A stretch of 64,000 bases of DNA from Takakia lepidozioides (lineage: Eukaryota; Plantae; Bryophyta): positions 44,888,001 to 44,952,000 of the forward strand of contig CM060733.1 of assembly GCA_030704615.1 (NCBI GenBank), read 5' to 3'. Every line of letters starts with the position of its first letter. Position 1 is the first letter of the stretch. The notes under the pieces were generated by a model that saw only the letters and a list, made by a program, of their open reading frames with translations, was not told the DNA's origin and searched no databases. Shown here piece by piece: positions 18,288-64,000 of the stretch. The position numbers were made by a program, and so were the translations under genes.

Positions 18288-18328
18288 GATGAGGCCAATC
18301 CCTAGGACGATCGCGTACTGAACTCTAA

Positions 18329-18340
18329 GCTCTGATACCA
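18329..18340 (-). promoter_or_regulatory. Primer-binding site complementary to the tRNA-iMet 3' end
   Basis: TGGTATCAGAGC on the minus strand, 2 nt from the 5' LTR end. Confidence 0.92.
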
Positions 18341-18342
18341 AG

Positions 18343-39237: not shown

Positions 39238-42200
39238 CTAAGACAGTAAAGGGCTTCCCTCTCGAATGAGCACAAATATGCTACCACCCTCTCCGCGGGA
39301 AATGCGTAATTCCTCATCCAGGAATGTGGTCAACAACCATGACTGTGCCTGATTTGCCTGAATGGGGAATTTGAAGGGTGGTTGACCAGATAAGGTTCTT
39401 GCCACAGATGTTGCAGCATCTTGTAGCGGGCGCAGCACTCCCTGAATGGGTGTCAAATCAATGCTCTGGCCCAAAAACTCCATAGTCTCTGGAATTTCAA
39501 TGGAGTCTGTGAGCTGCGGAGTGCCAATTATTCCCTCCTCAAATTTGATCTGACACCGCACAACCAAACCATCCTGGAATTAGTTTCAGTCATGATTTTT
39601 TGATCTTTCGTATTTGGAGTGTGTGCATCAGGCACAGGACAACTGCAGAAATGTCCTCATAAGATGTTTGTCTTGTGGCACACCCAGTTTGGACACAACC
39701 GGGGCTTAGCCTTGAGGACCAACAGCATAGAGAGAGAAGGAAAGAATACAATTTTAAGCATCCACAGAGGCACAGGCAGAAACAAACCAAGAATACTAGA
39801 GAGAGAGAGATTCATTACGTCAGGCCCAAAGAAGCATGGGAGGGGAGAGAGAGTGTGTGCTTTCAAAAAGTTATAGATGCACATAAAGAGCCTCCTTTGC
39901 TCCTCCACTATAGTTGAAACTATACCAAGTGACCAAACAATCTCAGGGCTGGTGCCCACAGGGGAACTAACGAAACTTACTGGAGCTTCAACAAACTGTC
40001 GGGGGTTACCTGCACTCGTTTTGGGCTGCGCACTTCAAATGATGCAGAGGTACTGAATGAAGTGGTAGCCAAGGGCCCCTCAAAAGAAACTGAATTCTGC
40101 ACTGTCAATGCCTGGGAGTCTATGGTCTGCGAAATCTCACCAACTTTGACTAGAGGCAGGTTACCAGTGGCCAGCAATGGGAACAGCTCAGAAAACGATG
40201 TGTACCTGCATAGCACCCCAACAGCTCATTGCGAGGTTTTGAGAATGAGCTTCCAGTGATCATAATATAATACAAATGTAAAAGATTCCCATCTAAGTGA
40301 GATCCGAGGCTTCTTGACTTCACAAAGGCATTCCTTGAGTCATGGGTTTTGTTCTACTAGGCAATCAACAGTAGTTATAGATCATAACAGTACCTTGCTG
40401 TACTTAACAAGGTTCACATGCCCTGTGAAAACAGACCTTGGTACCTTATGCATTAGTCACCTTTTGTGCATGTGAAGGACGAGGGATACGAGGGAGGGGG
40501 ACATGGAGCATGGTAGGATCAGCTTCTTTGATGAATGTTCCTTCAGAAATAAAAAGCACATATACTTAGAAGAGGAATAAGGCAGCACATTTTGGAACTT
40601 TCCCATTCTGCAGGACTCCCATCAAGGTACACCTTTTGGTCAGTCATTTTCCTCTCAATGGCACCCTTGTTGGAACGGAAATGCACACTACAACGTTGTA
40701 ACAATTTACGATGGGGGCTGATATGAAACTTTGCAAGGAGGAAGAAGACGCACGCTAAGATCCATTTGCCGTTGAGAAGGGTCAGAGCTTCAGTGGGGGC
40801 AGGTGTGGGGTTTTGAGCTTCCAGTTGTGTAATGAGCTCAATGACCTCTGCCCGAGTGTCGCTACTAGCATTCAAGCCACGTTGTGTGCCATAAAGTGCA
40901 TCCACCAGTCCTTGTTTCAGCTCTCCCACCCCTGTGACACTCTCTCTAATGGCTGTTGCAACATCAGTGAGGCTCTCTCCAGAACCGTTTTCCTTTGGGG
41001 GTTCAAGGAGTCCAGCAACCTCATCATCGTCTCTGCAACCATCCACAAGAGTGACTTGTCAAATCTCCAAAAGCAAGCTAAGATCGTCTTCTTTCAAGAG
41101 TTTGTCTGACAATTAGATGAGGGTTTCCTCCCTCCTGTCTCCTCTCTGTCTAACAAACAAGTACATCCCTGCCAATTAGTATATAACAAATCTCTCCAGG
41201 ACGTCAGCCAATATTTTGTCCATATCGCTCCATTGCTTCAAAACAAGATCTGCCCCTAGCTTGAGCTGGATGTTAGTGGTTACTCTTGGGTCCAGTTTTA
41301 CCAAGGCTTTGAAATTGGATATTATACGCACCGATTCTCTGGTCGTGGGAAGTGTTGCCTTAAGATGATCAAAACTTTCTGGAAGTTATCAGCTCTCCTA
41401 CATAGACATAGCTGAAGTCATTTCTGCTGACAGGAAAGATATGTATCTCACATACATTTGGACAGGACTTGGATGTTGCCAAAGAATGTAGTTTCTTATA
41501 CCATCTTACACTTTCTGGATGCTGGGCAGCACTTTAGAGTTTGAACTTCACAAGAACACCGGTTCGCAATGACACATGCATCTACCATCTCCATAGTTAG
41601 TAAATATAATGTCACAGCTGGTGGGCGGTTCTGTGTGTTGTGTATGCCTGGCATTAGAACTGCCATAGAGGGAGCATAACAGCACATTGAAGCGAACCAT
41701 TTTCAATATAATACAGTAACGATAATTAGACAACTAGAAGTATCATTGGATCCTTAGCCAGGGTTTCTAGACCTTCACTTTCCAACATATCAGATACAGT
41801 GATCCTAGTAGCAACTCGCACCCAATACCCGGGGGGTGATCTTATTTCAGATCCTTGAGATTTGGATAATCCTTAGCTGCAGATATTACCTGTGTGATAG
41901 TAATCAGCACTAAAGAAAGCTACTGCGATTCGTAAATATTGATATCATGCTGCATACCTGGACTTCGGATTGGGCCCTGTCAGGAACAGCCAGCCTTACT
42001 GTGCTTACCAGCTATCACACACAATCATGAACTTCCTTCTTCACAATGCAAAGTGAACTCTGACACGAAATTGGCCATACTATACAGGGCCTGCTCAAAC
42101 TCCATGAATGGTAGGACGAATCTCTGCAATGCAACACTCTTAAGTTACTTTAGCTGAGCGTCCAGGCCAGTTCACTCCCACAACTTCTTCATTACACCAT

Positions 42201-42500
42201 TTTGAGTACCTTCCAAAAAGGGAAAGACATCGAACAGACAGAAATAGAATACCCGGCACCGGCTGCTGCAGAAAACAAACCCCGCTTCCTTGCAACGTGC
42301 AAGCTGTGGTGAAACAACCCATGGAACGATCGCGAAGCGTTCGATGTGGCAGAGCGAAGTTCTGCCAGTGACGATGCCGACATTCTCCGCAGCAAGAAGG
42401 ATGATGACGATGGAGAAACATGCAGATGCCCCTCAGTTTGCAACCCCTGAAGTGACTGAACTATGGCAATAGAAGACGTTGCAGCAGAAAACACCGCCAT
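39238..42500 (-). CDS. FBN1: Plastid lipid-associated protein / fibrillin (FBN1/FBN2-type), 4 exons (42500-42253, 41032-40754, 40205-40010, 39549-39238), 344 aa
   Basis: Ser/Ala-rich transit peptide; [79 protein letters not shown]. The joined length of 1035 nt is in frame. Confidence 0.93.
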
Positions 42501-44612: not shown

Positions 44613-47600
44613 ATGGGCCGGAGGAGACCAACCCGAGAACTGCAGACTTTAGGGAGTTGTATCATCTGCTTATTTCTCATGGGACTCTTATTTCATGTCA
44701 CAGTGGTATCCGGTGGAGGTGAGTACCTGCAAGCCACTAGTTAGCATCATCTAGACTTTCTAGCAAAAACTGCATATCAAAGTGTGTGCCTTCTCTGATA
44801 CGTTTGGAAAAACGATTGCTGCATAGAATCACATGGGCACACCAGTTCTGTAGATCACTTAGAATCAGAACCTGCTGTCATATTACATAGCACTGCAGCT
44901 TTCATACGTACGCTTTCGTAAGTACTAAGTAATGGTGGGGAGGGGCTAATGCAATGCAGGATCTGCACCAACATACAACCCAAAACTGGGAACAAGCAGG
45001 GGTGGGACTCAAATCAAAGTGCAGTCAAACGATCGCACATGGACCCTCCAGCAACACTTTCTTAAAGTGGGCTCTGGACAACCTATAGCAGCTGACCATG
45101 TTGTGGCACTGGACAGTGACACAGTGGAAGCCCAGTTTACCATGCCTCCGATCCCAGAGGGCACTGGTAAAAAAGGCGTAGTCCAGCTCTTGTACTCACA
45201 TGATGGCAGTCCCTACACTGCTATTGGCAAGTTTGTCTACTATGGTATGTAAAACATGTGCAATTTGAGCATTCTAGTCTTCAATACAAAATCAGGTCTT
45301 ACGGTAACACGAAGGAATGACCATTCTGCAACCTGTAGGTTTCCAAACAGAGCAAGTTGATCCCCCTCAACACATTCCTTCGTCCCTAGGTGCACGTATC
45401 CCAATATCAACAGTAATAGACACTCACAAGCTTTCAAATCACGTTGCTTTGTGAATTGAATTTGACTTATGTTTCTTAAGTTGTAGATTATGACCAATAT
45501 AAGATGTTTGCAATAACAGATGGGAAAATATGGGCCACAAGGGCCTTGAGCCTCAGCAATGAAGAGAGCATATGGAACCTCCAGAGTAGCATCTTCCCTC
45601 GAAGCTATAAATATTCGTTGGTGTCAATGCAATACATGCCTACTTGTAAGTTGGTGGATGGAACTGTCACTCCGGCAAAATATCCAATTCTTCATGAATA
45701 TGCTCGCCGGAAAAATGCAAAATTGGCCATTGACTGCTCAATCACAGACCCTAAACGCATTACTCACATCTCCCTCAACAACCAGGAGTACATTGGAGTC
45801 AGAGGTAAGATTTTCATGACTCTATATCAAACCTAATCAATGATTATCTCCCCCCAATTTAATACACCAGCATGCATAGAATGCCATACCGAGGCCATCT
45901 CAGCAACCGTAGAAACACTTCTGGTGCAGCTTAGCAGAGAAGAGATGTCTCTTCTAACTAAACAAAAGCTATAAGAATAGTAGTGAAAAAGCAGACCTCC
46001 CAGGCCATCTTTGGACGTGATGCTCTTTCCTTTATGAGACATTCCGACACATATTGGAGGCATTCCTGGTCCTCCGTGACGATAGAATGTTGCAACAAAA
46101 ATTACCTGTCTGCACTATAATAATTCAAAGTGACTGTATTGACAGGATTGGAACCCCAATTTCGTGAAAATAACAGCCCATTTATGGAGCTGACTAGACG
46201 TCAACTACACCGATCAAAGGTCTCCCCTGCCCTTTCCTCCCCCCCCCCTTTTTTTTGTTATAAAGGGGATGAAGCCCTGTCCCTTTATTACTAGTTTTGT
46301 ACAGAGGGAAGGTCAAATTGCACATCATACTTCCAATAAACCTTGGTGAATCTGAGACTCACAGAGTGCAGAATCCACAAATGCAACAGAAGACACCAAA
46401 AGACCTAAACCACAAGTGCATGGAGGTCATGCTCTCCTGCATGAGGCACTCCATGTCCCTTTGGACCTGCCCTGGCCATAATAAATTTATGTGTTCTTCA
46501 GCTTCTCTCTCTGTCAGCTACCTGAAATTGATTCTATTTTTCCCCTTCTAATAACTCAACGATACAGAAAGGCAGCAAGTGGCACTGCCATGATGAGCGA
46601 AGTTGGGACTCTAAAGTAGAATGATCCGTCATGGAAGACCCAGGTTCTAAATCTTTGTCATCTCAGTGACCTGCTTCTATGATCAGGAGGCCGAACGCCG
46701 GCTTGCAGCAGCTATTCCAGTATGTACCACTCGGGATATCGGGATGGGACTTTCCATTTTGATTATTTTTGCCACTCCAACAAATCCGGGTGTTGTGAAT
46801 GCTACGACGGATGTCGCTGGCACCTTCATAGGAGTTGGGGGGCCAATTGCTTATGTGGTGAGCATCATAGTTGGAGCTCCTGGAACCTACCAACTGATCT
46901 CACTTACTCCGTCTTGTACAGGTACAACTACAGGGAATATTTGTTCTGCATTTGATGAGACTTTTTGAAAAGAACACAATGCACTCACATCTTTTGAAGT
47001 ATAGCAGATCTTGTCAGCCATGAAAATAGTCATCTACTAGTTACCTCGCTCAGCGAATCTCTAATCTGAGAGAACTTCAGATCACTTACTTGCATATCCA
47101 AGAATACCCTTGAAATTCATACTTGAAGTTAGGCACATCTTTCATATCGAAAACATTGTGCGCAGGTGTGAAAATGCCGCTGATATTCAATGTCTCGGGG
47201 CCCCCTTCGCCTCAGTACAGTTTTGTCAGCTCCACATTCGATCCGGCAGGGTACGACTCAGGATCCTCTGTCATATTCACCATCACGTCTGCTGATGGCC
47301 AGGGAATAATTCCTACAGCCATTCTTGGTGGTCCCTTCCCCTTTCAAGTGACCCTCGTCCAGTCCACCAATACTTCTGGCAATGGCCTCACCTTTCCTGT
47401 TCCGTTCAATGTTGTCGAACAACAGAATGGCATCTGGATGGTGACATGTACACCAACCCGGTTCTTGCCCACAACAGGTGATCCTCATCACTAGTGTCAC
47501 TACCAATTCACATCTTCTGACAATGATTTTGACTTCAATCTTATCATGTATGGCATTACCACCATACAATCTCCGTGGACATTGTCCACCATCCACATGA

Positions 47601-50600
47601 TGACTATCGTTTAAGATTGAACTTTGTTCTTCAGAATGAATGCCTCAATGTTCCCCACAATAAGAGCCGACTATACACAACAGTGATCGCTCCTTTTCCA
47701 CCTGTTGACATCGATACATGTGGTGTCATTTTTAACAGGAACTGTGAGTCTCAACAGTCTTATTATTGTGGACGGGGCATTCAGTTTTAAAATGAAAGCT
47801 CTAAATGCAAGTGAGGCAGCTGCTACGTTCATGCTGTATCCTAATGGCACTTTGCCTGCTGGCCCAACTGTTTTCAGTGTAGATGCCCAAGACACCCTCC
47901 CAAAATACATGGTCATTCATCAAATCACAGCTCAGGTGAGAAATTGCATTACAGATTGACGTTGTTGATTAAGTTTGTGGATTTGAGATGCCTGAGCAGT
48001 CAACAAGGTTTTCCAGGTAGGTGCTGCTGATCATGTTTTCCCCTTGGGCATCTCAACAAAAAACCAACTTTTAAAGGAGTGAACTGAATTGAACCGCCTG
48101 CCCATCCATGCAACGTAATACTTCACCACTACAAAGATTTGAAGGTGAATTCATAATTTGACTGAACAATCTCTAAAAAGAAAGATAGAAAAGAGGAAAC
48201 CTCTAATGTCCACAGTGGGCCACAATAGCCCATAGGACAAACCAAGACCTCAAACACAAATGGGCATAATCTCATGGCTGTGCATCTTGCCCAGGTGTCA
48301 GATCCATCCGGCACAATGTTGGTCAGCAATATCTGTGATGTGGGGCGTGCAACAGTTGGCTGCTTCTTTCCAATATTCCTAAAAAAGGCAGGTGTCTATG
48401 TCATCAATGTGACCATCGACAGTGGCACTCTTCTGGAGCCTGGGGTACGAGTACTGGTCACTCCTGGCATGGTCTCTGGCCCAATGTCCACCATGGCCAT
48501 TGAGGGGGTGATTTCCAACAATACCCAAAAGTCTGCTGGTGACACTATAACCGCGGTTCTTACCCTGCAAGACACTTATGGAAATGCTGGTAATACAGCC
48601 TACACCTCGGGAGGATGGAATACAACAGTGATCGTCATGCTCACAGGCGATAGGGGCTCATCTATTGGCATGTCTGTTAATGCTGGGGTGGGCTCTACCA
48701 ATGCTAGTGCCCAGGTGACCACTGCTGGGTATTATGTCGCCTCTGCTTATATTGGCTCCACTGGCAATGCCCTCCAGGGATCTGGAAAGTATGGCTTTTA
48801 TGTTAATGCGAATATTGTCAATACTACAGGTAACCTCCAATTGCATTCTCCTGGATGTTCATTACTTTACCATCAACATGATAATATACTACCCCACTGG
48901 AGTCCACCTTCCAAATGGAAGGCAGTAGCCCAGGAGTCAACCTGCTCTACTCCACTGGCATCGAATTTCTGACTGCTCATTCGCACAAAGTAGTCTAGGA
49001 TATCCGAGAACAAATCTGTTGCTTTCTTTTATGCTGTGAATTTATGCATGACGGCAGTACATGCAACAGTAACCGACCAAAAAATCTTTGGTTTCAGGAG
49101 TAAAGCACCATCAATTCCTTCTTAAGTCAGTTGGCCTTCATGTGTGGCCTTTTTACCTTCTTTCTTTAAGGCTATGATCACAGTTTGGTTGGCAACTCTT
49201 CATAAATCCGCAGGTTGGACAGGCAACATAATGGTGGGACAAACGGTTGCTGGAGTGCTCACACCTGTTGTAGTGGCCCTGAAAGACTCATATGGGAATG
49301 TGATAGATGGCTCCATGCTGAGGGCAACTCCACATCTCGTCATACAAATGGGGGGGCAGAACTTCTCAGCTCAGGCTGTTGGTAGAGTCTTCCAACTGAT
49401 GCTGAACCAAACAATTGCCAAAACTGGAATTATTATTACTGCTAGCTATGGGTCCACTGAAGTGGCCTCTTTTAATGCTACCTGCATCCCAGGTGACTAC
49501 CTTACAAATTTCCCTGAAATTATCCCACTTGGTGTCCATGTACTGTACAATTGTCCCAGGCGACGTACAAAGAATCTCAAACTTCCAGAAAATGCACATT
49601 TTGATAGCCTGCATATATAGAAGTAAAATACATCATGCTGTCTTACTGGCTCTCCCAGAAAATGTTGTAGAGCTCTGTTCAGTTTGATGTTCTTTTAGTC
49701 ACTTTGACCCTCATGATTACCTATATCATAGAGACTTCTGTTGTGGTGTAACAGTCAACATGCTGCATCTGACTTGTCATTAGAAGCAAAGATCTGGACC
49801 TAGCTGCCAACTTAACCTGCTCTCCAGAGGGCCATGGGTTAAGTGTCCCTTGGAGTTTGGTTGCAAATCAGATGCAATACTCATGTTTTTCTCTGGGAAA
49901 TAAGAGTTCCTGTTTCAAGTTGGCAGCTTGAAATCTACAAGAGGGGGCCCTTCACAAGTATGTAAATAACAACATACTTATGAAGAGGCATGTGACATTC
50001 TCCCAGACATTGTCATATGTATAGCCCCCACCGGAAGTCAGATCTTGTTGAAACTAACCTGTGTACAGGGTAATCCAAGGTTTATCTATTTGGAGGCCAG
50101 AGTGCAAAAATAGCATTGGGAACAAATTTACTGAACTTTCTTGAGGTCTACTATGAACAGGTCCTGTTGATGTCACCACCTCAAAGGTCATTGTCTCCCC
50201 CGTGAAATTAACAGTGGACGAGGGTGGGACCCTCACAGTCACTCTTATGGACTCTTATGGTAATCTCGTCACCTCCACTACCAATCTCGAAACCTTTGAT
50301 GGAGCAGCTTTAGTCAAGGATGACAATTTGGGGGCAACAAGTTTGGAGTTGACAACCGATCCTGATGATGCCACTGGTAATCCATATACTTTCTTCTTCA
50401 GAGCTCCCACAGTTGCAGGAGACTACTATGCACGCATCCCAATTGGGAGCAAAATGTTAATGACTGAAGCAATAATTGCTGTGGTACCTGGCGATCCCGT
50501 GGGCGCTCACTTTAGTATAAGTGGCGTGGGCTTAGGAGACGCACAACCGGGAGGAAGCTACAGTGTATATATTACTGCCAGAGACATGTACAATAATGTG

Positions 50601-53600
50601 TGGCAAGGAGATGGCTCAAAACTCAGTGTGACCATAGCTGCTGGAGACCTAACAGTGGCTGCCTCAGACCAGTTCATCACTAGTGATCCTGTGAGGGGCT
50701 TCAAACTTACTTTTAAGATACCAGCTACTACTGGGCCTTGCACTATCACTGCTAAAGGCTTTGACACAGATACCACGAGCACAGTTATGACAATGCGCAT
50801 TGTTGCTGGTGATTTCAAAGCAGCAGTTGTGGAAGAGCTAAGGCAAGGGGTGGTTGGTCAGTATTCTTCTTTCTTCCTGGTGGCCCAAGATGCAGGAGGT
50901 TTCTGTAGGGATAATCCTGCCTTACCACCAGATCGCTTTGCAATAAGATTGTGCAACAATGTCACTTGTGGCCGGGCTACAGTGAATGATCGGCACTTGT
51001 CAGGTGGCCGCTACACAGTTACCTGGAGTGCTCCTGCTGTGGGCAACTACCAAGTCCAATTTTGGACACCCAGCGGAATCATGTCTCCCATCCAAGCTCT
51101 CACAGCCATCTCTTCAGCAAAGACTGACAGAGTCATGTACTACCCAAGGTGTAACGGCGTGCCCCCAACAAAAGCCACCTGCCCACAATTTTACAGCATA
51201 GTCGCCGGTCAGGTGGCCACCTTCAACCTCTCTTCAAACAATGAACCTCCCAATGGTCCTAATGTCAGCATAAGCTCAGGGGGCAACTTGCCCGCCATCT
51301 CCATGACTGGTGGCAGGATTATTCGCCTTGTCGACCAAGGAGATGGAACCTACACTCTTTCTTATACAGCAACCTCGACTACAGCAAGCCTCACCATTGT
51401 TAATGGAGTACCCAGTACCATACCCCTGAGAATTACACCAGGGATCACAAGTTCTATCAAGTCAACTTGCCAGCTCTCAGTAACTCTGCCAGTGACTTGC
51501 GAGGCTGGCAGTAATATGAGTGGCTCTTTTAATGCAAACGATGCAATGGGCAACCAGCAAGATTACAGCCAATATCCATATCCCAATGACAAATTTATGC
51601 TCTTGGCAATCAACAAGGATACAGGTGAGAAGACGGTAGCGATGGTGACATTCTTACCAGACGGAGCCGGCAGCTATAGTGTCGCCCTGACAATGAATTG
51701 GGCCGGCATATACACTCTGCAGGCCACTTTGAATGGGGTGACCATCCCTCTGCTTGGGTCTGATCACAAAGTGCTTACATCGAGCACATTTGCTGTCACG
51801 CCAGGTGCCCCAGATCTTGGTTCCATGGTGTACCCTCCCCAAACCATGCAGCTCACAACAAAGGCAGGGGCTACTGGGAGTGTGACAGTATACTCCATGA
51901 AAGATGTGTTTGGGAACTCCATTCCAAAAAATCTGCTCCAGTGCTCAGCAAAAATAACTGATGCAAACGGGAATGACTCCACCATGGTTTGTGCATTGAA
52001 TGACGACTATGTCACCTTCACTTACACCAATCTCAGCACAGCCGGATCCGACTACACTTTCCAATACTTCATTGCTGCCAATGGGGTTGAAGTAGGCTTG
52101 ACAAACCCTTTGTTTATTGCCCCTGCCGATCCCTGGCCCACAGCTTGCAGCATCACAACTCCATCTCCAATAATGTCACAAGTGGGGAGTAAGACTTTCA
52201 TAGAAATTCAGTGCCAGGACAGGTACAACAACTCCTGCCTTGGTGATCTCTCAGGTCAGTTCACAGTCACAGTGGTGAGACTCGGGGGTGCGCCAAACTT
52301 GCCACCAATCTTGGCAAGTACAGCGTTGTCAACTGTAACGGGAAAAATTGAAGCTTACTTTGTTCTCAAGCAGTCTGGAAATTTCACTGCCACTGTGAAA
52401 TTTAGCGACACCAGTGGCTCCATCATTGGCTCACCTCTTTTAATTTGTGCTACCCCTGCCGATACCAGTGTGAATCTCACCTTTGCATCTTTGGCAGCTG
52501 CTCCAAGGAAGCTGGTGACTGACAAAACCCCTGCTAGGGTTGTGGCCGGGACGTTAAACCTTGTTAAGGTTGTGGGTGTTGACATCAACGGAAATCTCCA
52601 AGATGTTTCTAAATGCAGCAACGCAGTTGTACCAACAGTAACACTCAGAACAGACGACACTGGGAGTGATGGTGCCGGTGCAGGAGTAGCACCCCTGGTG
52701 GCTGCACCGATAGCTACCCTCAGTTACACAGACCCCGGTTGCGTATTCGTCTTCAACTTTACAGCCACTGCGGTGTACAAAGTTGGGACTTACACACCGG
52801 CGAAGTATGAGCTGAAGGTGACATGGATCTCTGGTGCTGCCACAAATGCCACTGACATTGCTGGCAGTCCCTTCCTTTTCCAACTCGATCCAGGAACCTT
52901 GGACATTCCAAGCACAGTAATCCAGCTCTCAGGAAGGGGGGCTGGGCCAACAGGATTGAGCACCACCTTTCTGCTCTCAACAAGGGACAAATTTGGCAAT
53001 GCCCCTACCTACAACCAGACTCTCAATGTTTCGGCAGTAGTGGCCCCAACTGGCAGTTTAAAACCTTTCGAGAGACGCCTGCTTGGGAGCGTGGATATAA
53101 TCACCCAGCCAGGTGGTTTCAGTGACTTGAACTCCTTGGAACTCTCTGAAGCGTTTGATGAGGACTCACTTGAGGCCGTGGGCAATGTTGGCCCTGTCCC
53201 ACTCATGATGCCTACAGTCATCAACAATCTGGATACCACTTACTCCATCTCATTCACTGTAGTCAAGTCAGCAGCTTATGATATATTTGTCTACATGAAT
53301 GGTATGGTTTTGCAACCAACCCCAGCTTCCCCAGCCACCATCAACTCCTATGTTGTCGTTCCAGGAATACCAGACATCACTCGCCTGAAACCCATAGGCA
53401 CAGGCATAAGTGATGGCAAAATAATAACAGTTGGGACCACCATAAACTTCACAATCAACCTATGTGACAATTTTGGTAACCCCGTGAACATGTCTGCGGA
53501 AACAGATCTGCTGAGGAACTACATGAATGGAATTGCAAACCACTCCAGTATCAACATTCAGAGGGCCATTGGCAATAACACAGTTTCCATCAGCCCTTTG

Positions 53601-56600
53601 CTTACAACTGGAGGAACCTTCTCAACTGCCAATGGTGTCATTCTGTATTCTTGCACCCCCAACATAGTTGGCTTGATGAATATTGCCCTTGCATACGGTG
53701 ATGTTGGCTCACAGAAGATTATACTTTGGTAACCCCGTGAACATGTCTGCGGAGGAGGAAACAGATCTGCTGAGGAACCTACATGAATGGAATTGCCAAC
53801 CACTCCAGTATCAACATTCAGAGGGCCATTGGCAATAACACAGTTTCCATCAGGCCCTTTGCTTACAACTGGAGGAACCTATCACAACTGCCAAATGGTG
53901 TCATTCTGTATTCATTGCACCCCCAACATAGTTGGCCTTGAGAATATTGCCCTTGCATACGGGTGATGTTTGGCTCACAGAAGATTATACTGCTTACTGA
54001 TGTGGGCGATCCTGAACCCAACAATTGCCTTGCTTTTGGAGACCTGGGTGGGATGATTGGTGCAGGAAATTCAGGCCATATTACAGTACAACTTGTTGAC
54101 TCAAATGGTCTAGCAGTTGATCTAAGTCCATCTTCTGGTGGTGATTTTGTAAGGCTGAGCATCACAGCAGTCAATAGCAATGACCCAAACTATAATCCCC
54201 CCATGCCCCCCGGTGTGAGCTCTAGTGACAATGGAGATGGCACCTTCTCTCTTCAATATGACACATTCAGAACAGGCAACTTCACAATTTTTATCCTAGT
54301 GGGTAGTCCCGACAAACCATTGGGTGGGAAAAGTGATGGCTACCCTCTGCAGGTCAGTCTTTCAGATCATCCATCACAACTTTAAAGTTCACAATGAATA
54401 TAAGTAGGTTGTATTCTCAACGTGCTTGTCTGCTCATTCACATACTTCTGAACAATCAGGCACTTGCAACCATGTCCACATATGTGTGTGAGATACTTCT
54501 GAACAATCAGGCACTTGCAACCATGTCCACATATGTGTGTGAGAAATAGGAAGAATCTGTAACCCCTTTCTTTTTCTCCTCACAACAGCAGACAGGACGC
54601 AGACAAGAACACAAAAATTTAAACGTGCAGTATATACATATGAAGTACGCACATTAATTTACAGGCACACACCAATGCAGTCTCATTAATAGTAGTGAAA
54701 ACAAAGTAATGCAGTGGTGATTACCTTCTGTTGGGAGAAAAGGATAACAGAAGTGAGTGGGTATCAGGTGTGGGCAGCCGCAACAGTAATTGAAAGGACC
54801 ACAGTGTCCATGGTCAGCAATGGAACTACCAATCGGGCAGGGCAAGATTGGATACAAATTGAAGTCCAGGCAATGGATGGCTTCCAAAACATGCAAGACT
54901 ATGTCTTGGCACCCACCGATGGGTTCCAAGCAAACATTTTGCAGCCTGACAACACTTTAGCTATGGTGGCCCTAAATCGAACCTGGCAAACAGGTGACAA
55001 TGGACTCTCCTATGCAGTTTGGACACTGAATTTCCTTCCCCTGCAAGCTGGCCCTGGCAGCACCTACACTTTCATTATCATTTGGAGGAATGACACTACA
55101 GATATTCCAGTACCTTCCCCAGCAATGGTGGTGAACACAATACCTGGCATGCCATCCTCAGTAAACATGAAGGTAACTGTCAACTACAAGCATCAACATA
55201 TTGGTGAGAATCATGCTGCACTCATAAGACTAGCACAACAATCCACAACAATCCGCTGACTTTTGGCCCTTTACTATAATTTTTGGAACCATGCTACAAG
55301 GCTTACCTTCCACAGTGCGGCACATGTCAACTTGGAGACTCTAATTCCAACTTGACTTGGGCTTAAAGAGACTTTAGAGAGATGACCCATCACAATTGAA
55401 GTGAAGAAACTCTAGCCCGTCTGGATTGACATGATAATCATCACCTCCACAAAGCTCCCCAAGAATACTGGGAGATGTGACCGGGACACTAAGTGATATT
55501 TAGATTCTCAATAAGGAACTTGCTTGCTGGTTTCATCATTGGAGCTAAGATTCCCACACCTATGTGGGTGCATGGAACATGGCTTACAAGTGGGAAGTCA
55601 TGGGCATCATTGAGCTGTGGGAATCCAGAATGTTAAGCCCCATTATGCACAGCAGCCAGTGGTCACTTAAGAGACACGGTAACCAGTGAACCAATTTTGA
55701 CATTAGAATATCCATGGACATGTCTCACCAACCTTGACTAATAAACCACAACTATGGGGCAGGTGACTGGTTCAGGGACCTCATCTGCAAGTGTGGGAGC
55801 ATGGGCCACTATCATGATCCGGCTGTTTGATGATTTAAATAATCCTATAAGCTCAGTGCCAGACATTGCAGATGCGAACATCACAGCCTCACTATCGCTT
55901 GGGAAAATCTTGAATCAGACAATGGCAAATTGCACCATCTCCTCCAACCCACCAGCATCTGTGTGTCATTACATGGTAACCACACCTGGATGGTATGTTC
56001 TTGACATCTTTTCCAACAGCAACAAGTTGAAGTCACTTGGTATACAGGTGGGTCACGGCCTAGTAAGTGGGTCCAACTGCATAGCGTCTGGTGATGGAGT
56101 GGGTACCACTGGCATACCACTTTTCCCAGGAGCACCAACAACCTTCAACATTCAAACATTTGACCACGAGAACAACAGTGTCCCACAGAACAAGGTGTAC
56201 TTTGAAGTCAAGGGTGAGAATCTCAACCAATCAGGTGTCATAGTGCCTAAGGGCGGCTTTCCGATCTATGTGTCGGATAACTCTTACCAGGTACAGTACA
56301 CCCCATTGCAAGCGGGTATTTACAATGTTTTTGTGCGAAGGGCATCTGTTGATATCATGGGATCTCCATACCAGATTGCAGTTGAAGTTGGGCCAGTGGC
56401 TCCAAACTGTATACTTGACTCACAATCACTTGATCCATGTCCTGTTGGTGGCACAAAAAATATCACACTGCTTTCCCGAGATGCATTTGGGAATGTCCGA
56501 ACGGAGCAACAGGATATCCTTCATGTTTTCAAAACAGTTGATGGTTTCCCTCAAGAGTCTGAAGCTGATATCATGTCACCAGTTGGCAATGGGGCCTACA

Positions 56601-59600
56601 GCTATGGCTTCAACTGTGTAAACGACACCCTAATTCAGGTCACCTATGATGCCATGCTAGTGTACTCTGGCAAAATTGAAACCATTATCGGCCTAGCAGA
56701 TGCCACTCAGTGTACACTTTCACTAGAGAATGCAGTAATCAGTGCTGGAGCTTCTGGGCGTGGACTGGTTGTGACAAGAGATCTTGGTGGTCATCCACTT
56801 ACATCAGGGGGCCAATTCATGAAAATTCAGTATTGGACTTTGTCTGGTACTAATGATACAATGTCAGTGTTCGATAACGATGATGGTACTTACAGTGTTT
56901 CCTATCAGATCCTGACTAGTGGAATATACTATGTGCTTGCTGAACTAAACGGCTTCTCTTTCTCCTCACAAACTCTGCTAGTTCTTCCAGGCACACCAAA
57001 TGCTGGCCAGACCAGTGTGATGCTGGATCCCAACGGTTACACTGTCAATTTGGAAGGGTCGTTCATGATCCAAATATTTGATGAACATAACAATAACATC
57101 ACAGAAAGTGGAGCCCTGGACACTAGTTCCTTAAGCTTGTTCTACATCAGTGGGGAGGTGCCAGCAAGGACTGCAATGTACACAGCTGCCAATTTAGTCA
57201 TTGAATTCAACCCACAGAGTTATTCATACACTGTTATATTCACACCTAGCCTTCCAGGCAATGTATATGTAAATCTGAAGGTGGAAGGTGAGGGAGTCCT
57301 TAACTTTGGAGCACCTTACACTGCAGTGGTGGCACCCCTCCCACCATCTCCCACAAACTTTGACCTATGGGGTGCTGGTATTGAGGCTGGAGGTGTAGCA
57401 GGTGAAAACACGTATTTTTATGTGCGGATAAGAGATTCACAGGGGACCATTGTGTTTACTGAGCCAACCGACTCCTTTGATGTGAAGATTTCCCCATCCT
57501 CGCTGGTTCCAGGCGGCACATCATCTTCATATATTGGCAACGGCATAGTCCAGTTCAGTTATCTGGTTGTCCAAGCCTCATCAAAACTCAGTGTGGCAAT
57601 TTCTTATGGGGGTGTTCGTCTTCAGAACCCAGTCAATGTGCAGGTGAAAGATTCAGCAGGTCAAATTGATGTTTCACAGACAGTGGTCCTGGGCCCTGAT
57701 GGAGTACCAGTCAGCACCTCAGTGCCACTCGTGAGTGTTGTGGGAACACCAGATACGAGCATAGCCTTCATGATCCAGCCCCATGACAGCGATGGACTCA
57801 TTATCACCAACCCAAATCCCAATGACACACTTCCCACTTTCCTGGTAACTATTAGCGGGGGAGGCTCTCCTCTAGCCGTCCAGACAGATCCAACTGGCTG
57901 GTCTTTTGAGTTCACAGTTCCTATTAGCACTACCAGCCAGAACCTGTTTGTCGCTGTTCAATCAAATGCAAATGGTGGGGTCCTTACTGATGTAAAAAAC
58001 AGTGGGTTCACCATCTATTTTGCACCCGGACTCTCATCTCCATCAAACACAGTCATTGTGCAAAGCCCATTGAGCTCAGTGAGCCCAACGCAGCTGATTG
58101 CAGGACAAACCATAAAGATAACTGTACAAGCATACGATCAATACAACAACCCACAAATCTACAACATCCAAAACCTTGATTGCTTTACAGCCACCTTGAA
58201 CAGCTTCCCATCTGGAGATGTAGTTGACACACCAGTGACAGGCCTCAACAACGGGGATCTCACTTATGATCTACTCCTCACAGTCACAGCAGTGGGTGAC
58301 TATAATGTGACCATATATCTTAATGGAGAACAGGCTACCCAACTCCAGCTCTCGGTAGTCAACAATGATTTGTCTTTGACAAGTATTACATTGGTCAACC
58401 CACAATTGGATCCCATGATGGTGACAATGGAAAGCACCTTCACTATCTTTGCATCTGACATATTTGAGAACCCCATCACCGATGCAGGCAATCTGTGTGT
58501 CATACTGCAACATAAAATAACTGGTGCTAACTACAGCACCAGAGTCCTGCCATCAAATGACACCACTGGCCAATTCCAGGTGTATATTATACCAACAAAC
58601 GCAGGCCAATACTTTATCTTTGTGGGTGATGGCACTGCCAGAAGTGGTGGAAGCGCCTACAACCTCACACTAGTCAATATCTGGCCTGGTCCTGTTTCTC
58701 TCAACCTGACAAACACATCAATATTAACACAAGTCTACAAGGCTGGAACCCCTGCAATGTTTACTATTCTTGCCCTGGATGCACATAGCAATTCCAATTA
58801 CACAATTCCCCAGGTAACTATCATCCCAGCTTTCCCCGGATTGCCCTATGCGGCATCAGTGGCATCACCCTGTGGGTCTGCAGCAGAACTTGATGACTCA
58901 GCATCATGCACACCTACTGCTCCATTGTATACAACTACAGTCACATTCCTTCCCCTAGCACCTGGGATTCTCAATATCTCCATTACGTGGGATACAGACA
59001 TCAACATCACCTACAACAACATTCAGATACTACCGGGAACTAGGCCTATTGCATTGAGTGCCAAGTTTTCCCACAATCTTGGTTCTATTGCAGTAAGTTT
59101 TGACATACCAACTGATGCAGGATATACAGCCTTCAATGGGCTAAATAGTCCACAATTTGGCTGGGAGAGGTGCAATAACACACTAGACCAGTCAGTCATT
59201 GAAAAGGTTGGCACAGGCCCCGTCTGCAATTTCAAGGACTCAACCACTATGGTCATCCAGCTTGGTTACAATGCAACCATCTTGCCATCTGATTCTGGAA
59301 CAGGTGACCACATCTCTCTGTCAGGTGACATTTATAACCAAGATGACACCTCATCTCCAGTGTTTGGGTGGGTGCCACTAGGAATATCGGACAACAGCCC
59401 CCCACCAGTAGCACGACTGGTGGGAGCAAGCATAACAAGTGTGTGTGACAACCTTACCTTGGATGCATCAGGATCTAGTGGAGCTGCAGGACGGCCCTTG
59501 CTCTATAGCTTCACTGTGAGAGGTACAGGTGATCCCGACAAGCTAGCAAACGTTGCCAACCTGCTTGATACGTTACCGTCGCAAATGGTAGTCACAATTG

Positions 59601-62600
59601 AACATGGCCTATTGGATGCGGAGCAGACATACATATTCCAGGTTGTAGTGACAAACTATCTTGGCATATCCGATACTGCCCCACTCACTGTCCAGACAGT
59701 GCGTACATCTATTCCACAGGTAAAGTGCTTCATCTCTCCGAGATTAAAAAGAAACTGTGACTGCCCCTTGTACGATGGAATGATTCTTTAAAGCATGAAT
59801 ACTGGTCCTCTCTGTTTGTTGCTTCAAAGGATCTGTCTCATACTGGAACACCATTTAAGGCACAGTTGGCACAGTCCCAAGCTGAGACCACTCTCACTAA
59901 GGAGGTGTAATTCGTCTCTTGCTTTAGTGAACATTCACTGACGTCAGATCTGTCAGTAGCTCACACATTTTAACACTTGAAAGTAACACCAAAGTGCTCA
60001 AACTAGACGTGACAAACTCCTTTGTTTTCAATGCTAAGAAGGAGACCCGTTGTGTGCAGGTGTCCATTCGTGACAATGTCAAAATAATTGAGGTTATGAG
60101 GTGGGAAACTGTAGAGCTAGAGGCCCGTGCACATCTTGCACAGGGATTTAGTCTGCAAGCAGACGGAACCTGTGCGCTCAGTCCATCATCAAAGGGGAAG
60201 AAAGTCAAGTACCCTCCTCCTGCACCTCTTATGTATGAATGGACTCAAACTGGGGTATCAGTTTTGGACGAAGACGCGGTGGGCTGGAATGCCCGAAGCT
60301 TGAACATACCCGGAAATCTTCTTAGACCAGGATTGATCTACAACTTCCAAGTCAAATGCTGGCCAGCAGGGTCACCCCAGCTCTCCTCCACTGCATCTGT
60401 AGCAATCCATGCTACACCATCTCCCCTTGCTATCAAAGTTGTTGGAGGGGACCGAAAAATAAACGCCTCAGAAGACCTTTACCTCAAAGCTTCTGTATAT
60501 GACCCTGACGATTCAGTCGATTCTAATATTGACCAGCCACACCCTTACGAGTTCAGCTGGAGTTGTGATAACCTCAATCTGAGTAGCTATTTTGATGCCG
60601 ACATCTATCCCAACGTTCCAGGAGCCATCAAACAGACACTTCTAATTCCTGCATCGATACTTCTGGATGGCATGACCTACACATTTACTGTGACGGTGAG
60701 CTGGAAGCCAACAGTTTCTTGGAAGTCTAGGCAGGTCCAGTGATGTATTTGTGCAAACGTGATTTAGATAACAGCTAATAACCAGTCTATTCAAGTGTTA
60801 TAATGCAAACTTGATTTCTCTGTACACTTGCTCGTAGATCATTGAACCCAAGAACCTCTTGTGCAGGTGGCCAGGGCTCCATACACGGACAAATCACGCA
60901 CTGATGCAACAGCGACCGCAACTATTATGGCTTCTACATCTGCCATGAACATAATAGCAAAAGTGACCAATGAGGCAGAAGTGCTCACCTATGGGATGTC
61001 ATCGTCACGAATGCTGAAGGTGATGTGCAGCGCTGGTCTGGGAACCTACAAGTGGCTGGTGGAGTCTAGCGCTGATGAAAGAACGAAAGCAGAATTGGGG
61101 GTAAGTATTTGCTTGGTTCTCCAATACTCCAATATGGCAAGGCCATGAAGGCCACTCCTAATGAAGCTGTGGCTAAGCTTGAGAACACAGAGTAGATCAA
61201 AAATTGCCCTTCCAGATTGCGCTCAAGGATTTCAGGAAATTCATCCTCTACTTCGAACATGCGAATTTTACATTTCCGAAATATGATGACGCATGAAAAC
61301 ATGGTCTGAATCACAATGCAAAATGCTTGACAGTTGATGCTCCATTAGCCTTGACCACATTGCCTCTACTCACAGGTGATAATGCTGGAGGAGAATACCA
61401 TGAAGGTCCCACCCCTGACGTTGGTGGCCGGGGCAGTCTATAATTTCACGTGTATTGCCACCAACGCAATGGCCACCGATGCTGCGTCGGTATTAGTGAC
61501 CACCTTGCCTGAACCCTCAGGTATCAATTTCTCATGGCTTAGAGAGCATCAAGGAGCAGCACTTCTTGGGGCTTCTAGTGAGAAGCTTCATTTTAGGTTT
61601 AAACGAATCTTGATCGTCAAAAAACTCCAGATGTTCGCTGTAGCAAATTGTAATGCTGAGGGCTCTGCGACTAGACCTTGACTCCCGCTTAATCCTTGCA
61701 TATTCCGAGGGTAGGTAAGAATCGCAAGGATTATGTAGGGAGTCTATCGTCTTTGCCCTGTACAGACTCCTTGTTAACTTCACAATATATTGGAACCACC
61801 CTTTGCGTCATCTACCGAACAGCTACACACACAACAAACATTTTCATTGACAATTCGCCGATGCATACCAAGCGGAAATATGCCTGTGTCTGCGTGTATG
61901 AGAAACTGGGGTGTGCTGTTTTAAGACCTCCCTGACATATATTGACTCAGTGACTTCCTTTCACAGGATGTGAATTTCCCTCTCTTCCCTGCAGCTCTTT
62001 GAGGGCGAAAGTCACTTGGTACTCTGATTCACAGTGACTCTAGGATACTGCAAACTGGTTTGCCCAAGTAGTTGAGCAGAAATTCAATTTGATTCATACC
62101 TTGATAGCGTTTTGCCACAGGTGGGACGGTTGAACTGAGCGCAAGTCCTGGAAACCCACACATCGCAGGCACAACTACCTACTCACTACGGGCATATGGG
62201 TGGAATCCTGGAGGGGACCTTATAGGCCCGTTGAAGTACGAGTTCCGCTATGTACTTGGGGACCCCACAGGCGGTTACTTGAAGGAGGTCATCATCCGCC
62301 CGGTATCGCTCGTAAACAAAGTGAGTGAGGTGTTGGTGATGTCTGGTACAGTTACATTCAGGGTCTACATAATCAATCCTGGGCCTGTTCGGTTTCTGCC
62401 CAACGACGCACCCTACGGTGCACTCTTCGAGTTTGAGCCAATTGTTTCGAAAAAAGGTCTCCGCAGAGGCTTGCTCGGCCTTCCCTCCACGGTCACCAAC
62501 TATTACAGCTTTGCCAAGAAGGGAATGTACTATCGATCCCTTGTAGCCATGGAGGCCTACGGCAGCGCAACGTTCCCCAAACCAGCAGGTCAGTCCCAAA

Positions 62601-64000
62601 GCTTTTCAGTACAGCGCTAGATCTCAGATGCATAGTGAACAACATGATGAGGCTGCTCTGTAGTGATTAAGTACGACACAGATCTTCAATGCGTTGATGC
62701 CTGATCCTAGCAAACAGAAAACCCAAGCCACATGTATGCACGTTCAATCAAACAAACCCGCAAAAAAACGTAAAGAAATCAGTGTATCAATCTAACAGAA
62801 GTCTGTTTAACTAACGTCCAGCGAATTAAAAATACTGAGATCATGAACTTAGAACTGAGTCATCATTTGGATGTTGTTGTAAATCAAGAGGCGATATCAT
62901 AATGCAGGCGGCTGCGGAGGGGGCGGCAACAAGAAAGTGATCAAAGACATGTTAAAGACGATAACATTCAATGACCCACAGTACCCAGCAGCCAGCCAAG
63001 GCAATGCGGTCCAGTCGGGATCGGGCCCCTACATTGCTTTGTTAACTGCGAGTGTTTACAGCAGAATCATAAACCGCCCAGGGAATTTGAACTTTGACGA
63101 GTTCAAAAATGCACTGCACATTTTCCTAGAAAAGCTTGACAAGGTTGCAATGTATGGAGTCAAGGTGCCCACAAGCATTAGCAGGCCATACGAGACTTTT
63201 ATAGATGCAGGTGATGCGTTTGTGAAGGCAGTGAAGCTAAAGTGCTTCAAGAGTTCCACCCAGGCACAAGCCATGATGGATCGGACCTCCATCATCCCAA
63301 TCTGGCTGGCAGAAATGTTATACCGCGACAACGGATTTGAGTCACCCAGTGTAATTGAGCGTTCAACGTTCACTGTTGGAGCCCTGAGCTTCAAATTGCC
63401 CCAGAATGCCAACAACCCACTGGGGGGACCAATCTACCTGTCTGGACAAATGGGTAGCTTCTTTGCCACAATCACACTACAGAAGGGCGGGGGCAACGAG
63501 TTTGGCATCGCAGCAAGCTGTTTTACCAAGTTCAGCCCTCTTTCAGCAGCAGGCACGTCCTCATTAAACAGGGATAAGAAGCTCATCAAATTGTTGCAAG
63601 TTTGCGACTTCAGTATCCTTGGACTAACTGCAGCTGACTTCTTTACGCTCACCGTCACTGGTTCTTTTATGAATCTCAGAAGAATTGGAAAAGGGTTAGC
63701 GTACAAGGCACTTCAGCTGGACAGGCATGGATATGCCGACCCCTCCATCCTGCAAAATGTCGTCCCTGCAGTAACAGGAGTATCCTTCAACTTTGTGGGA
63801 TCATATGCACGAATTGCCCTCGTCAAAGTCAAGACAGACAAGAGCTTCACCCCAGTTGGATGGCAAGGTATGCACGAGAAGTTCAAACCTCCCAAAGACA
63901 AGTATAAGCCACCCCAGGATTTTGTAGCTAGGGCCGAACGTATGGTGTTTGCTGAAAGTCAGAGTGCTGCAGAAAGTCGAAGGAGAGGGAGAGTGTGGGG
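44613..64000 (+). CDS. Giant secreted or cell-surface protein: signal peptide, IPT/TIG domains, many filamin-type Ig repeats, REJ/PKD1-like module; >4000 aa, 3' end outside the window
   Basis: Exon 44613-44718 encodes a signal peptide (MGRRRPTRELQTLGSCIICLFLMGLLFHVTVVSG). Exon 44960-45244 is IPT-like (PKLGTSRGGTQIKV...FVYY). Repeated DxxGN, DxGDGTYxVxY and IxGSP filamin motifs in ORFs 50202-53732 and 55754-59791. REJ hallmarks CDNLTLDASGSSG, GGDRKI...YDPDD...YEFSWSC, GGTVELS...GW...PLKYEFRY. About 17 exons; the last one in the window starts at 62908. Confidence 0.88.
46250..46480 (-). mobile_element. Short L1-like 3' fragment in an intron
   Basis: Minus strand ends AATAAAGGGACAGGGCTTCATCCCCTTTATAAC followed by an A-run. 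Confidence 0.4.
53472..53991. repeat. Exonic tandem duplication (253 bp plus a 267-bp insertion-riddled copy), probable assembly artefact
   Basis: The second copy (53725-53991) differs almost only by small insertions. Deleting it fuses ...GSQKIIL to LTDVGDPEPNNC in frame. Confidence 0.9.
54442..54543. repeat. 51-bp perfect tandem duplication in an intron
   Basis: ATACTTCTGAACAATCAGGCACTTGCAACCATGTCCACATATGTGTGTGAG x2. Confidence 0.9.

What the first reader, a model, noticed from the sequence alone, without database searches (positions are those of the whole stretch)
44613..64000. Giant filamin-Ig + REJ (polycystin-1-like) surface protein in a land plant: candidate gamete or flagellar recognition receptor
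Seen: a signal peptide, two IPT/TIG-like domains, ~3000 aa of N-glycosylation-rich filamin-type Ig repeats, then a full REJ module and a helical-then-beta region, still open at the window end. Known: extracellular filamin-like Ig arrays define the FUS1/GEX2 gamete-adhesion family. REJ modules define polycystin-1 and the sea-urchin receptor for egg jelly, and I do not know of them in angiosperms. Inference: this fuses a GEX2/FUS1-like rod to a PKD1-like module and may be an uncharacterised sperm, egg or ciliary receptor retained in plants with flagellated sperm, possibly partnering a PKD2-type channel.
Basis: partly seen in the sequence, partly recalled or inferred. Interest (0 to 1): 0.85.

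Follow-up and report, generated by a model that had tools for sequence, protein, structure and literature searches.

The report
Moss polycystin-like surface rod lacking channel
Mosses and liverworts carry a giant (about 4,600 amino acids) cell-surface protein built like the outer half of animal polycystin-1 or sperm egg-jelly receptors, including a GAIN domain that I found no report of in land plants, but it has lost the self-cleavage site and the whole membrane-signalling half, so it is probably a lipid-anchored adhesion rod, and its role in gametes is untested.

Summary
The gene is real: 17+ exons, 44613 to about 60 nt past the window end, about 4,600 aa, in what the homologs indicate is a moss. 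It is collinear with Ceratodon, Sphagnum and Marchantia genes and under purifying selection (dN/dS about 0.1). Order: signal peptide, IPT/TIG domains, 23 detected (probably about 28) filamin-type Ig repeats, REJ. The 'helical-then-beta' last exon has no Pfam hit but folds as a GAIN domain (Foldseek E 7e-9 to BAI3; Z 13.7 to CELSR1), which makes this a polycystin-1-type ectodomain. Unlike polycystin-1, every bryophyte copy lacks the GPS cleavage motif and any multi-pass membrane region. Five moss homologs end in a GPI-like tail; Sphagnum and M. paleacea copies have no evident anchor. A protist protein has the same domain order with GPS and TM helices intact, so this looks like a truncated old receptor, not a new GEX2-PKD1 fusion. 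A PKD2 partner is unlikely. The frameshift at 53725-53990 is an assembly error. A gamete role is plausible (about 45%) but untested: no expression data. No paper or earlier scan note on it was found.

The parts
44613..44718 (+). Exon 1: ATG and signal peptide
   Evidence: Sequence and GT donor; no signal-peptide predictor was available
44960..45244 (+). Exon 2: IPT/TIG domain 1
   Evidence: Atlas TIG clusters at 0.95; 49% identical in Sphagnum; no Pfam hit
45339..45389 (+). Small exon, start of putative TIG domain 2
   Evidence: Splice sites and phase read from the sequence; inferred
45487..45804 (+). Rest of putative TIG domain 2. Phase requires a further short exon somewhere in 45805-46686, which I did not find
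   Evidence: 42% identical in Sphagnum; phase check and failed search
46687..49492 (+). Five exons starting the Ig rod (46687-46921, 47166-47477, 47739-47935, 48295-48829, 49214-49492)
   Evidence: 45-65% identical and collinear in Ceratodon; repeats by family HMM
50161..54352 (+). Large Ig-rod exon (about 1,450 codons in the organism), interrupted only by the assembly error
   Evidence: Pfam Filamin; one ORF of 1,447-1,469 aa in Ceratodon and three other loci
53725..53990 (.). Assembly artefact: indel-ridden duplicate of the preceding 266 bp standing in place of 420 bp of real coding DNA
   Evidence: 93.6% identity with 10 gaps to the upstream copy; short-read contigs of X1 and X2 carry 420 other letters here and X6 has the same flanks; same 420-bp gap and matching flank peptides in Ceratodon
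54768..55172 (+). Exon with one Ig repeat
   Evidence: 67% identical in Ceratodon
55763..59719 (+). Large exon: nine detected filamin-type Ig repeats, then from about 59045 the PKD/REJ N-terminal part
   Evidence: Pfam; AlphaFold pLDDT 89 and fold search; match to the pre-REJ part of protist P0062, E 1e-14
60060..62588 (+). REJ module, four exons (60060-60734, 60867-61100, 61376-61520, 62121-62588)
   Evidence: Pfam REJ E 1e-11; E 6e-33 on the Ceratodon ortholog
62908..63845 (+). GAIN domain with a degenerate GPS: no Cys or Trp, Ser-Tyr-Ala where His-Leu-Thr/Ser is canonical
   Evidence: alignment; no GPS/GAIN Pfam hit in 11 homologs
63846..64000 (+). Basic/polar stalk and likely GPI omega region; hydrophobic tail and stop expected about 20 codons past the window
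   Evidence: Aligns to residue 361 of 363 with the closest homolog L015, which ends soon after in a hydrophobic tail; the window's own tail was not seen

Best explanation
A bryophyte descendant of an old eukaryotic polycystin-1-like receptor (TIG/filamin-Ig rod, REJ, GAIN, TM helices) that kept the ectodomain and lost the signalling half. It is secreted, N-glycosylated and, in most mosses, held on the outer plasma membrane by a GPI anchor just below a non-cleaving GAIN domain. GAIN and REJ form a membrane-proximal base, and about 28 Ig repeats project the N-terminal TIG domains roughly 100-150 nm outward as an adhesion or recognition rod. It cannot signal by itself; any signal needs a partner. 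Shown: domain order, GAIN fold, missing GPS motif, missing TM region, purifying selection. Inferred: GPI anchoring, rod length, non-cleavage, adhesion. I commit, as the single most likely site, to wall-less reproductive cells (sperm surface or egg/archegonial canal). The structural part is about 85% likely; the confidence given covers the whole statement including the reproductive role.
For: GAIN fold after REJ. GPI-like tail plus stop in five moss loci. Same domain order with GPS and TMs in protist protein P0062. Rod geometry resembles filamin and invasin/FdeC adhesins. dN/dS 0.07-0.12 among mosses. All named close homologs are bryophytes; no angiosperm-labelled hit appeared, and the GAIN exon hit only 5 of 1.84 billion representatives while still finding Marchantia at 33%. 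Ig-rod (FUS1/GEX2, PMC12069490) and REJ-GPS proteins (Ectocarpus male gamete, sea-urchin sperm, PMC4700764) are gamete-surface proteins elsewhere.
Against: No expression evidence: no run on record as RNA holds the gene and the one RNA-guess run shows no sense splice junction. No named fern, lycophyte, hornwort or charophyte homolog was found, although all have flagellated sperm. No sign of the fast evolution common in gamete-recognition proteins (region-wide averages only). Sphagnum and M. paleacea models lack the anchor. One plant carries a deleted, frameshifted copy (L008/L009). Unchecked first-reader notes report decaying flagellar genes in this genome.
Confidence: 0.45

Rival explanations
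1. Same protein, vegetative job: a GPI-anchored or secreted tether between plasma membrane and wall, or a surface/mucilage adhesin of protonema, rhizoids or spores, sensing wall stress or holding substrate and microbes through a partner kinase or channel.
For: Uniform purifying selection. GPI proteins commonly act at the plant wall-membrane interface (general knowledge). The anchor is absent in Sphagnum and M. paleacea models, which fits a matrix protein. Range so far follows bryophytes, not all plants with motile sperm.
Against: No vegetative RNA holder found either. A rod over 100 nm long is hard to fit under a primary wall (inference). No angiosperm homolog, though angiosperms have the same wall-membrane needs.
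Confidence: 0.35
2. One reading: a complete PKD1-like signalling receptor, made by fusing a GEX2/FUS1 rod to REJ, whose membrane part lies beyond the window and which partners a PKD2 channel on flagella.
For: REJ + GAIN is the polycystin-1 ectodomain signature. Ig_GEX2_N passes its Pfam cut-off. Chlamydomonas has split polycystin parts (MST3, SIP, PKD2; PMC11015965), so a separate membrane subunit is conceivable.
Against: Homolog reading frames stop within about 35-110 residues of the last GAIN strand, and no long hydrophobic ORF follows in the four flanks scanned. No GPS motif. TRP channels are described as absent from plants (PMC8318260). The protist P0062 also hits Ig_GEX2_N, so that hit is not GEX2-specific.
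Confidence: 0.07
3. A relic that is losing function: the gene is broken here (frameshift at 53.7-54.0 kb) and split in database annotations.
For: Apparent stop at 53730. Ceratodon and Marchantia annotations are split. A degraded copy exists in L008/L009.
Against: The break is an assembly error. The frame is continuous in four other loci. dN/dS is far below 1 in every region measurable.
Confidence: 0.05

Closest known systems
Polycystin-1 family (PKD1, PKDREJ, sea-urchin suREJ)
   Same: Long Ig-type ectodomain followed by REJ and then GAIN.
   Different: No GPS cleavage motif, no 11-TM/PLAT/channel region, no cytoplasmic tail; filamin-type instead of PKD-type repeats; no lectin or LRR domain detected; GPI-like end in most mosses.
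Protist REJ-GPS receptors: P0062 (EukProt label 'Rmarinus', probably Rhodelphis marinus, from memory, not verified), P0063, P0064; Ectocarpus Esi0130_0068 (PMC4700764)
   Same: P0062 has TIG repeats, filamin/Ig_GEX2_N repeats, REJ and GPS in the same order; 26% identity over the REJ region, E 4e-28.
   Different: They keep an intact GPS (His-Leu-Thr) and several TM helices; P0062 also has EGF and IQ motifs and nine TIG repeats. Orthology was not tested by a tree.
FUS1/GEX2 gamete adhesins
   Same: Extracellular filamin-like Ig array; Pfam Ig_GEX2_N hits above cut-off.
   Different: FUS1/GEX2 have seven Ig domains and one TM helix (PMC12069490, PMC13601591). This protein has about 28, plus TIG, REJ and GAIN, and no internal TM helix.
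Adhesion GPCRs (BAI3, latrophilin, CELSR1)
   Same: GAIN fold, Z 11-14, 8-11% identity.
   Different: No 7TM region and no GPS cysteines, tryptophans or catalytic His.
UniRef100_A0A8T0IAX4 / Ceratodon KC19_4G183500, M758_4G186200; Sphagnum CAM6030427.1; Marchantia paleacea Mapa_000092
   Same: These are the likely orthologs; the first is auto-labelled 'PKD/REJ-like domain-containing protein'.
   Different: The database models are partial or split, have no GAIN annotation, and no paper in the library names them.

Membership tests
Polycystin-1 (PKD1) family | REJ module in the ectodomain | tested here: met
   Pfam PF02010 E 1e-11 on a window exon; 6e-33, 5e-24 and 3e-30 on orthologs
Polycystin-1 (PKD1) family | GAIN domain directly after REJ (helical subdomain A plus beta-sandwich B, PMC3321182) | tested here: met
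   AlphaFold model pLDDT 79, pTM 0.81, six N-terminal helices then a beta sandwich; top Foldseek, VIA and Atlas hits are GAIN proteins. Rests on a predicted model from 11 sequences
Polycystin-1 (PKD1) family | GPS motif with His-Leu-Thr/Ser autoproteolysis site | tested here: not met
   No PF01825 hit in 11 homologs. Structural register (309 to BAI3 866, 298 to latrophilin 837) puts Ser-Tyr-Ala at the site; no His in any copy. Cleavage itself was not assayed
Polycystin-1 (PKD1) family | Multi-pass (11-TM) region with PLAT and channel domain | tested here: not met
   Homologs stop shortly after GAIN; no long hydrophobic ORF downstream in four loci. DNA beyond the window itself was not available
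Polycystin-1 (PKD1) family | Assembles with a PKD2-type channel | not testable with these tools
   Genome not searchable; a review states TRP channels are absent from plants (PMC8318260)
FUS1/GEX2 family | Extracellular filamin-like Ig domains | tested here: met
   Pfam Filamin and Ig_GEX2_N; fold search
FUS1/GEX2 family | Seven Ig domains and a single-pass TM helix | tested here: not met
   23 or more repeats; no TM helix in the annotated orthologs; only a terminal GPI-like tail
FUS1/GEX2 family | Repeats closer to GEX2/FUS1 than to other filamin repeats | tested here: inconclusive
   Filamin outscores Ig_GEX2_N (148 vs 64 bits; 77 vs 32) and no FUS1 chain appears in the top fold hits, but no GEX2 sequences were on hand for a tree
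FUS1/GEX2 family | Gamete-specific expression and role in gamete attachment | not testable with these tools
   No informative RNA run
Adhesion GPCRs | GAIN followed by a 7TM domain | tested here: not met
GPI-anchored proteins | Signal peptide plus C-terminal small-residue omega site, polar spacer and terminal hydrophobic tail | tested here: inconclusive
   Pattern seen by eye and hydropathy (KD 1.7-2.5) in L001, L002, L015, L016, L017; absent in Sphagnum and M. paleacea. No predictor was run, and the window's own tail lies beyond its end

The most novel reading that the evidence does not exclude
Bryophytes keep the ectodomain of a polycystin-1-like receptor as a stand-alone, non-cleaving, GPI-anchored GAIN protein on sperm or egg, where it serves as the long-range gamete adhesion or recognition molecule of non-seed plants: a GAIN domain used with no membrane signalling unit.
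Probability: 0.3. Interest if true: 0.88.

Novelty: new variant of a known kind. Interest (0 to 1): 0.64.

Why it matters
GAIN domains are known from adhesion GPCRs and polycystins, where they sit on a membrane signalling unit. A conserved land-plant GAIN that has lost both the cleavage site and the membrane unit extends the domain's range and offers a natural test of what GAIN and REJ do apart from tethered-agonist signalling. It also supplies a concrete, single-gene candidate for cell-surface adhesion in mosses and liverworts, testable by knockout in Ceratodon or Marchantia, where molecules for sperm-egg attachment are poorly known. It has been easy to miss: database models are split and Pfam does not see the GAIN domain.

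Tried and rejected
Sequence methods did not identify the last exon: Pfam, PDB sequences, Atlas features (best 0.83) and profile comparison to protist GAIN regions were all blank; only structure did. The third homolog search (REJ alignment) returned only its own query, so range outside bryophytes is poorly sampled. Metagenome scans gave nothing or only Sphagnum-like copies. A TIG HMM from P0062 matched only 18 residues of exon 2. The short exon needed between 45805 and 46686 was not found. Gene-ID and topic literature searches found no description. The identity of 'Rmarinus' could not be confirmed. Pseudogene reading rejected. Contamination rejected: introns and exon order are shared with mosses and the neighbours are a plastid fibrillin gene and plant retroelements.
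Full report
Observation. The + strand from 44613 to the window end holds one multi-exon gene. Searched exon by exon, the two large exons give Pfam Filamin (E 2.5e-21, 1.5e-43) and Ig_GEX2_N (E 1.9e-7, 2.1e-17), and exon 60060-60734 gives REJ (E 1.1e-11). Exon 44960-45244 has no Pfam hit but is nearest to IPT/TIG clusters in the ESM Atlas (0.95); the second TIG is inferred from motifs only. A family-built HMM finds 23 Ig repeats in the window's exons, and the gaps suggest about 28. Exon lengths sum to about 4,550 codons inside the window. One short exon between 45805 and 46686 is required by phase and was not found.

Is the gene intact? The frame breaks at 53725-53990, where the assembly has a 266-bp copy of the preceding DNA with 10 gaps. 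Short-read contigs from the probable source sample carry 420 other letters there, and a second sample of the same species shows the same flanks. Ceratodon has exactly 420 bp between the same points, in frame, and the flanking peptides match. Three other loci have this exon as one ORF of 1,467-1,469 aa. The break is an assembly error. dN/dS is 0.07-0.12 between mosses where dS is measurable (near saturation, so approximate) and 0.2-0.38 among Sphagnum copies.

Relatives. Exon-by-exon collinear genes occur in Ceratodon purpureus (45-75% identity), Sphagnum balticum (42-65%), Marchantia paleacea (30-41%) and several unnamed assemblies. The window groups with Ceratodon-like copies (moderate support), so it is most likely a moss. 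The last exon hit only 5 of 1.84 billion representatives, one of them a spurious bacterial protein. Range is therefore bryophyte so far, and weakly sampled (one search returned nothing new). More distantly, P0062 (EukProt 'Rmarinus', 5,663 aa) has TIG repeats, filamin/Ig_GEX2_N repeats, REJ, an intact GPS and TM helices in the same order, and the moss repeat HMM recognises nine of its repeats.

The last exon. Pfam, PDB sequences, Atlas features and profile comparison were blank. AlphaFold on an 11-sequence alignment gave pLDDT 79, pTM 0.81: six helices then a beta sandwich, the layout defined for GAIN (PMC3321182). The top six Foldseek hits are GAIN structures (BAI3 E 7e-9). The independent VIA search agrees (CELSR1 Z 13.7, rmsd 5.0, 269 aligned; BAI3 Z 13.4), and the best-scoring Atlas row is a REJ+GPS cluster (TM 0.62). 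REJ followed by GAIN is the polycystin-1 ectodomain signature. The GPS, however, is gone: no cysteines or tryptophans, and the structural register against BAI3 and cleaved latrophilin places Ser-Tyr-Ala where His-Leu-Thr/Ser belongs (register could be off by one). No bryophyte copy has the histidine. Non-cleavage is an inference.

The C-terminus. In five moss loci the frame ends 60-85 residues after GAIN in a small-residue site, polar spacer and terminal hydrophobic tail, the pattern of a GPI signal; Sphagnum and M. paleacea copies end in basic tails without one. No long hydrophobic ORF follows in the four flanks scanned. The window aligns with its closest homolog up to residue 361 of 363, so its stop is expected about 20 codons past 64000; an unchecked scan note places an unrelated gene 1,766 letters further on. 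The window's own tail was not seen.

How it most likely works. A secreted, glycosylated, probably GPI-anchored rod: non-cleaving GAIN and REJ at the membrane, about 28 filamin-type Ig domains as a stalk (fold matches: filamin domains Z 16-17, FdeC/invasin adhesin rods), TIG domains at the tip. At about 4-4.5 nm per domain (general knowledge) the stalk spans 100-150 nm. It has no means to signal alone. Adhesion or recognition is inferred from architecture. The most parsimonious origin is loss of the membrane half from an old protist-type REJ-GAIN receptor, not a fusion of GEX2 with PKD1: FUS1/GEX2 have seven Ig domains and one TM helix, Filamin outscores Ig_GEX2_N, and P0062 has the same combination. 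A PKD2 partner is unlikely, since TRP channels are described as absent from plants, though Chlamydomonas shows that polycystin parts can be split across genes.

Where it acts is open. For gametes: gamete-surface precedents for both Ig rods and REJ-GPS proteins, no angiosperm hit, and the fit of a long rod to wall-less cells. Against: no expression data, no named hits in other plants with motile sperm, no excess of amino-acid change, and unchecked notes of decaying flagellar genes in this genome, which may themselves be assembly errors like the one shown here. I put a reproductive role at about 45% and a vegetative wall or surface role at about 35%.

Novelty. Databases auto-label one fragment as PKD/REJ-like. 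It works like a polycystin-1 ectodomain but fails membership on GPS and TM region: a new variant of a known kind. Interest 0.64.

Noticed in passing
window 54442-54492 and 54763-54772: Further assembly errors: a 51-bp duplication in the intron and small indels at the acceptor of exon 54768, both absent from short-read contigs. Apparent frameshifts in this assembly should be checked against reads.
   Followed up: yes
window 54041->55142 and 55177->60989, run X6: Contigs of the RNA-guess run join these places. The first skip has CT..AC ends (an intron on the minus strand); the second removes 5.8 kb. Could be an antisense transcript, a deleted copy or a chimera.
   Followed up: no
window 51985->53396, 53400-53650 and 58440-58920: Loose ends and doubled depth in X1/X2 point to diverged or deleted fragments of this gene elsewhere in the genome.
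   Followed up: no
L008:2019-10345 and L009: An unnamed plant has a copy with most of the rod and REJ missing and a frameshift in the GAIN exon: loss in at least one lineage, or a dead paralog.
   Followed up: partly
L007 (SRR33208241): Diverged homolog (24-41%) with a different intron pattern, organism unknown; may extend the range beyond mosses and Marchantia.
   Followed up: partly
PDB 9fqr_Hn, 8glv_AE, 9y6s (fold search): An axonemal doublet-microtubule protein of sperm, Chlamydomonas and Leishmania also matches the GAIN-like model (Z 10-11); chain identity not checked.
   Followed up: no
window about 53071, 46699 and 62462: Arg-Arg-Leu-Leu-like motifs recur at domain junctions (in the large exon, at the start of the rod, between REJ and GAIN); possible processing sites (from the sequence).
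   Followed up: no
window 39800-42500, minus strand: Divergently oriented plastid fibrillin (PAP)-like gene about 2.1 kb upstream of the start codon; named from recalled motifs.
   Followed up: no
window 4992-8549 and 14844-18341: LINE-type reverse transcriptase ORFs and a Ty3/gypsy gag-pol element, read from the translations.
   Followed up: no
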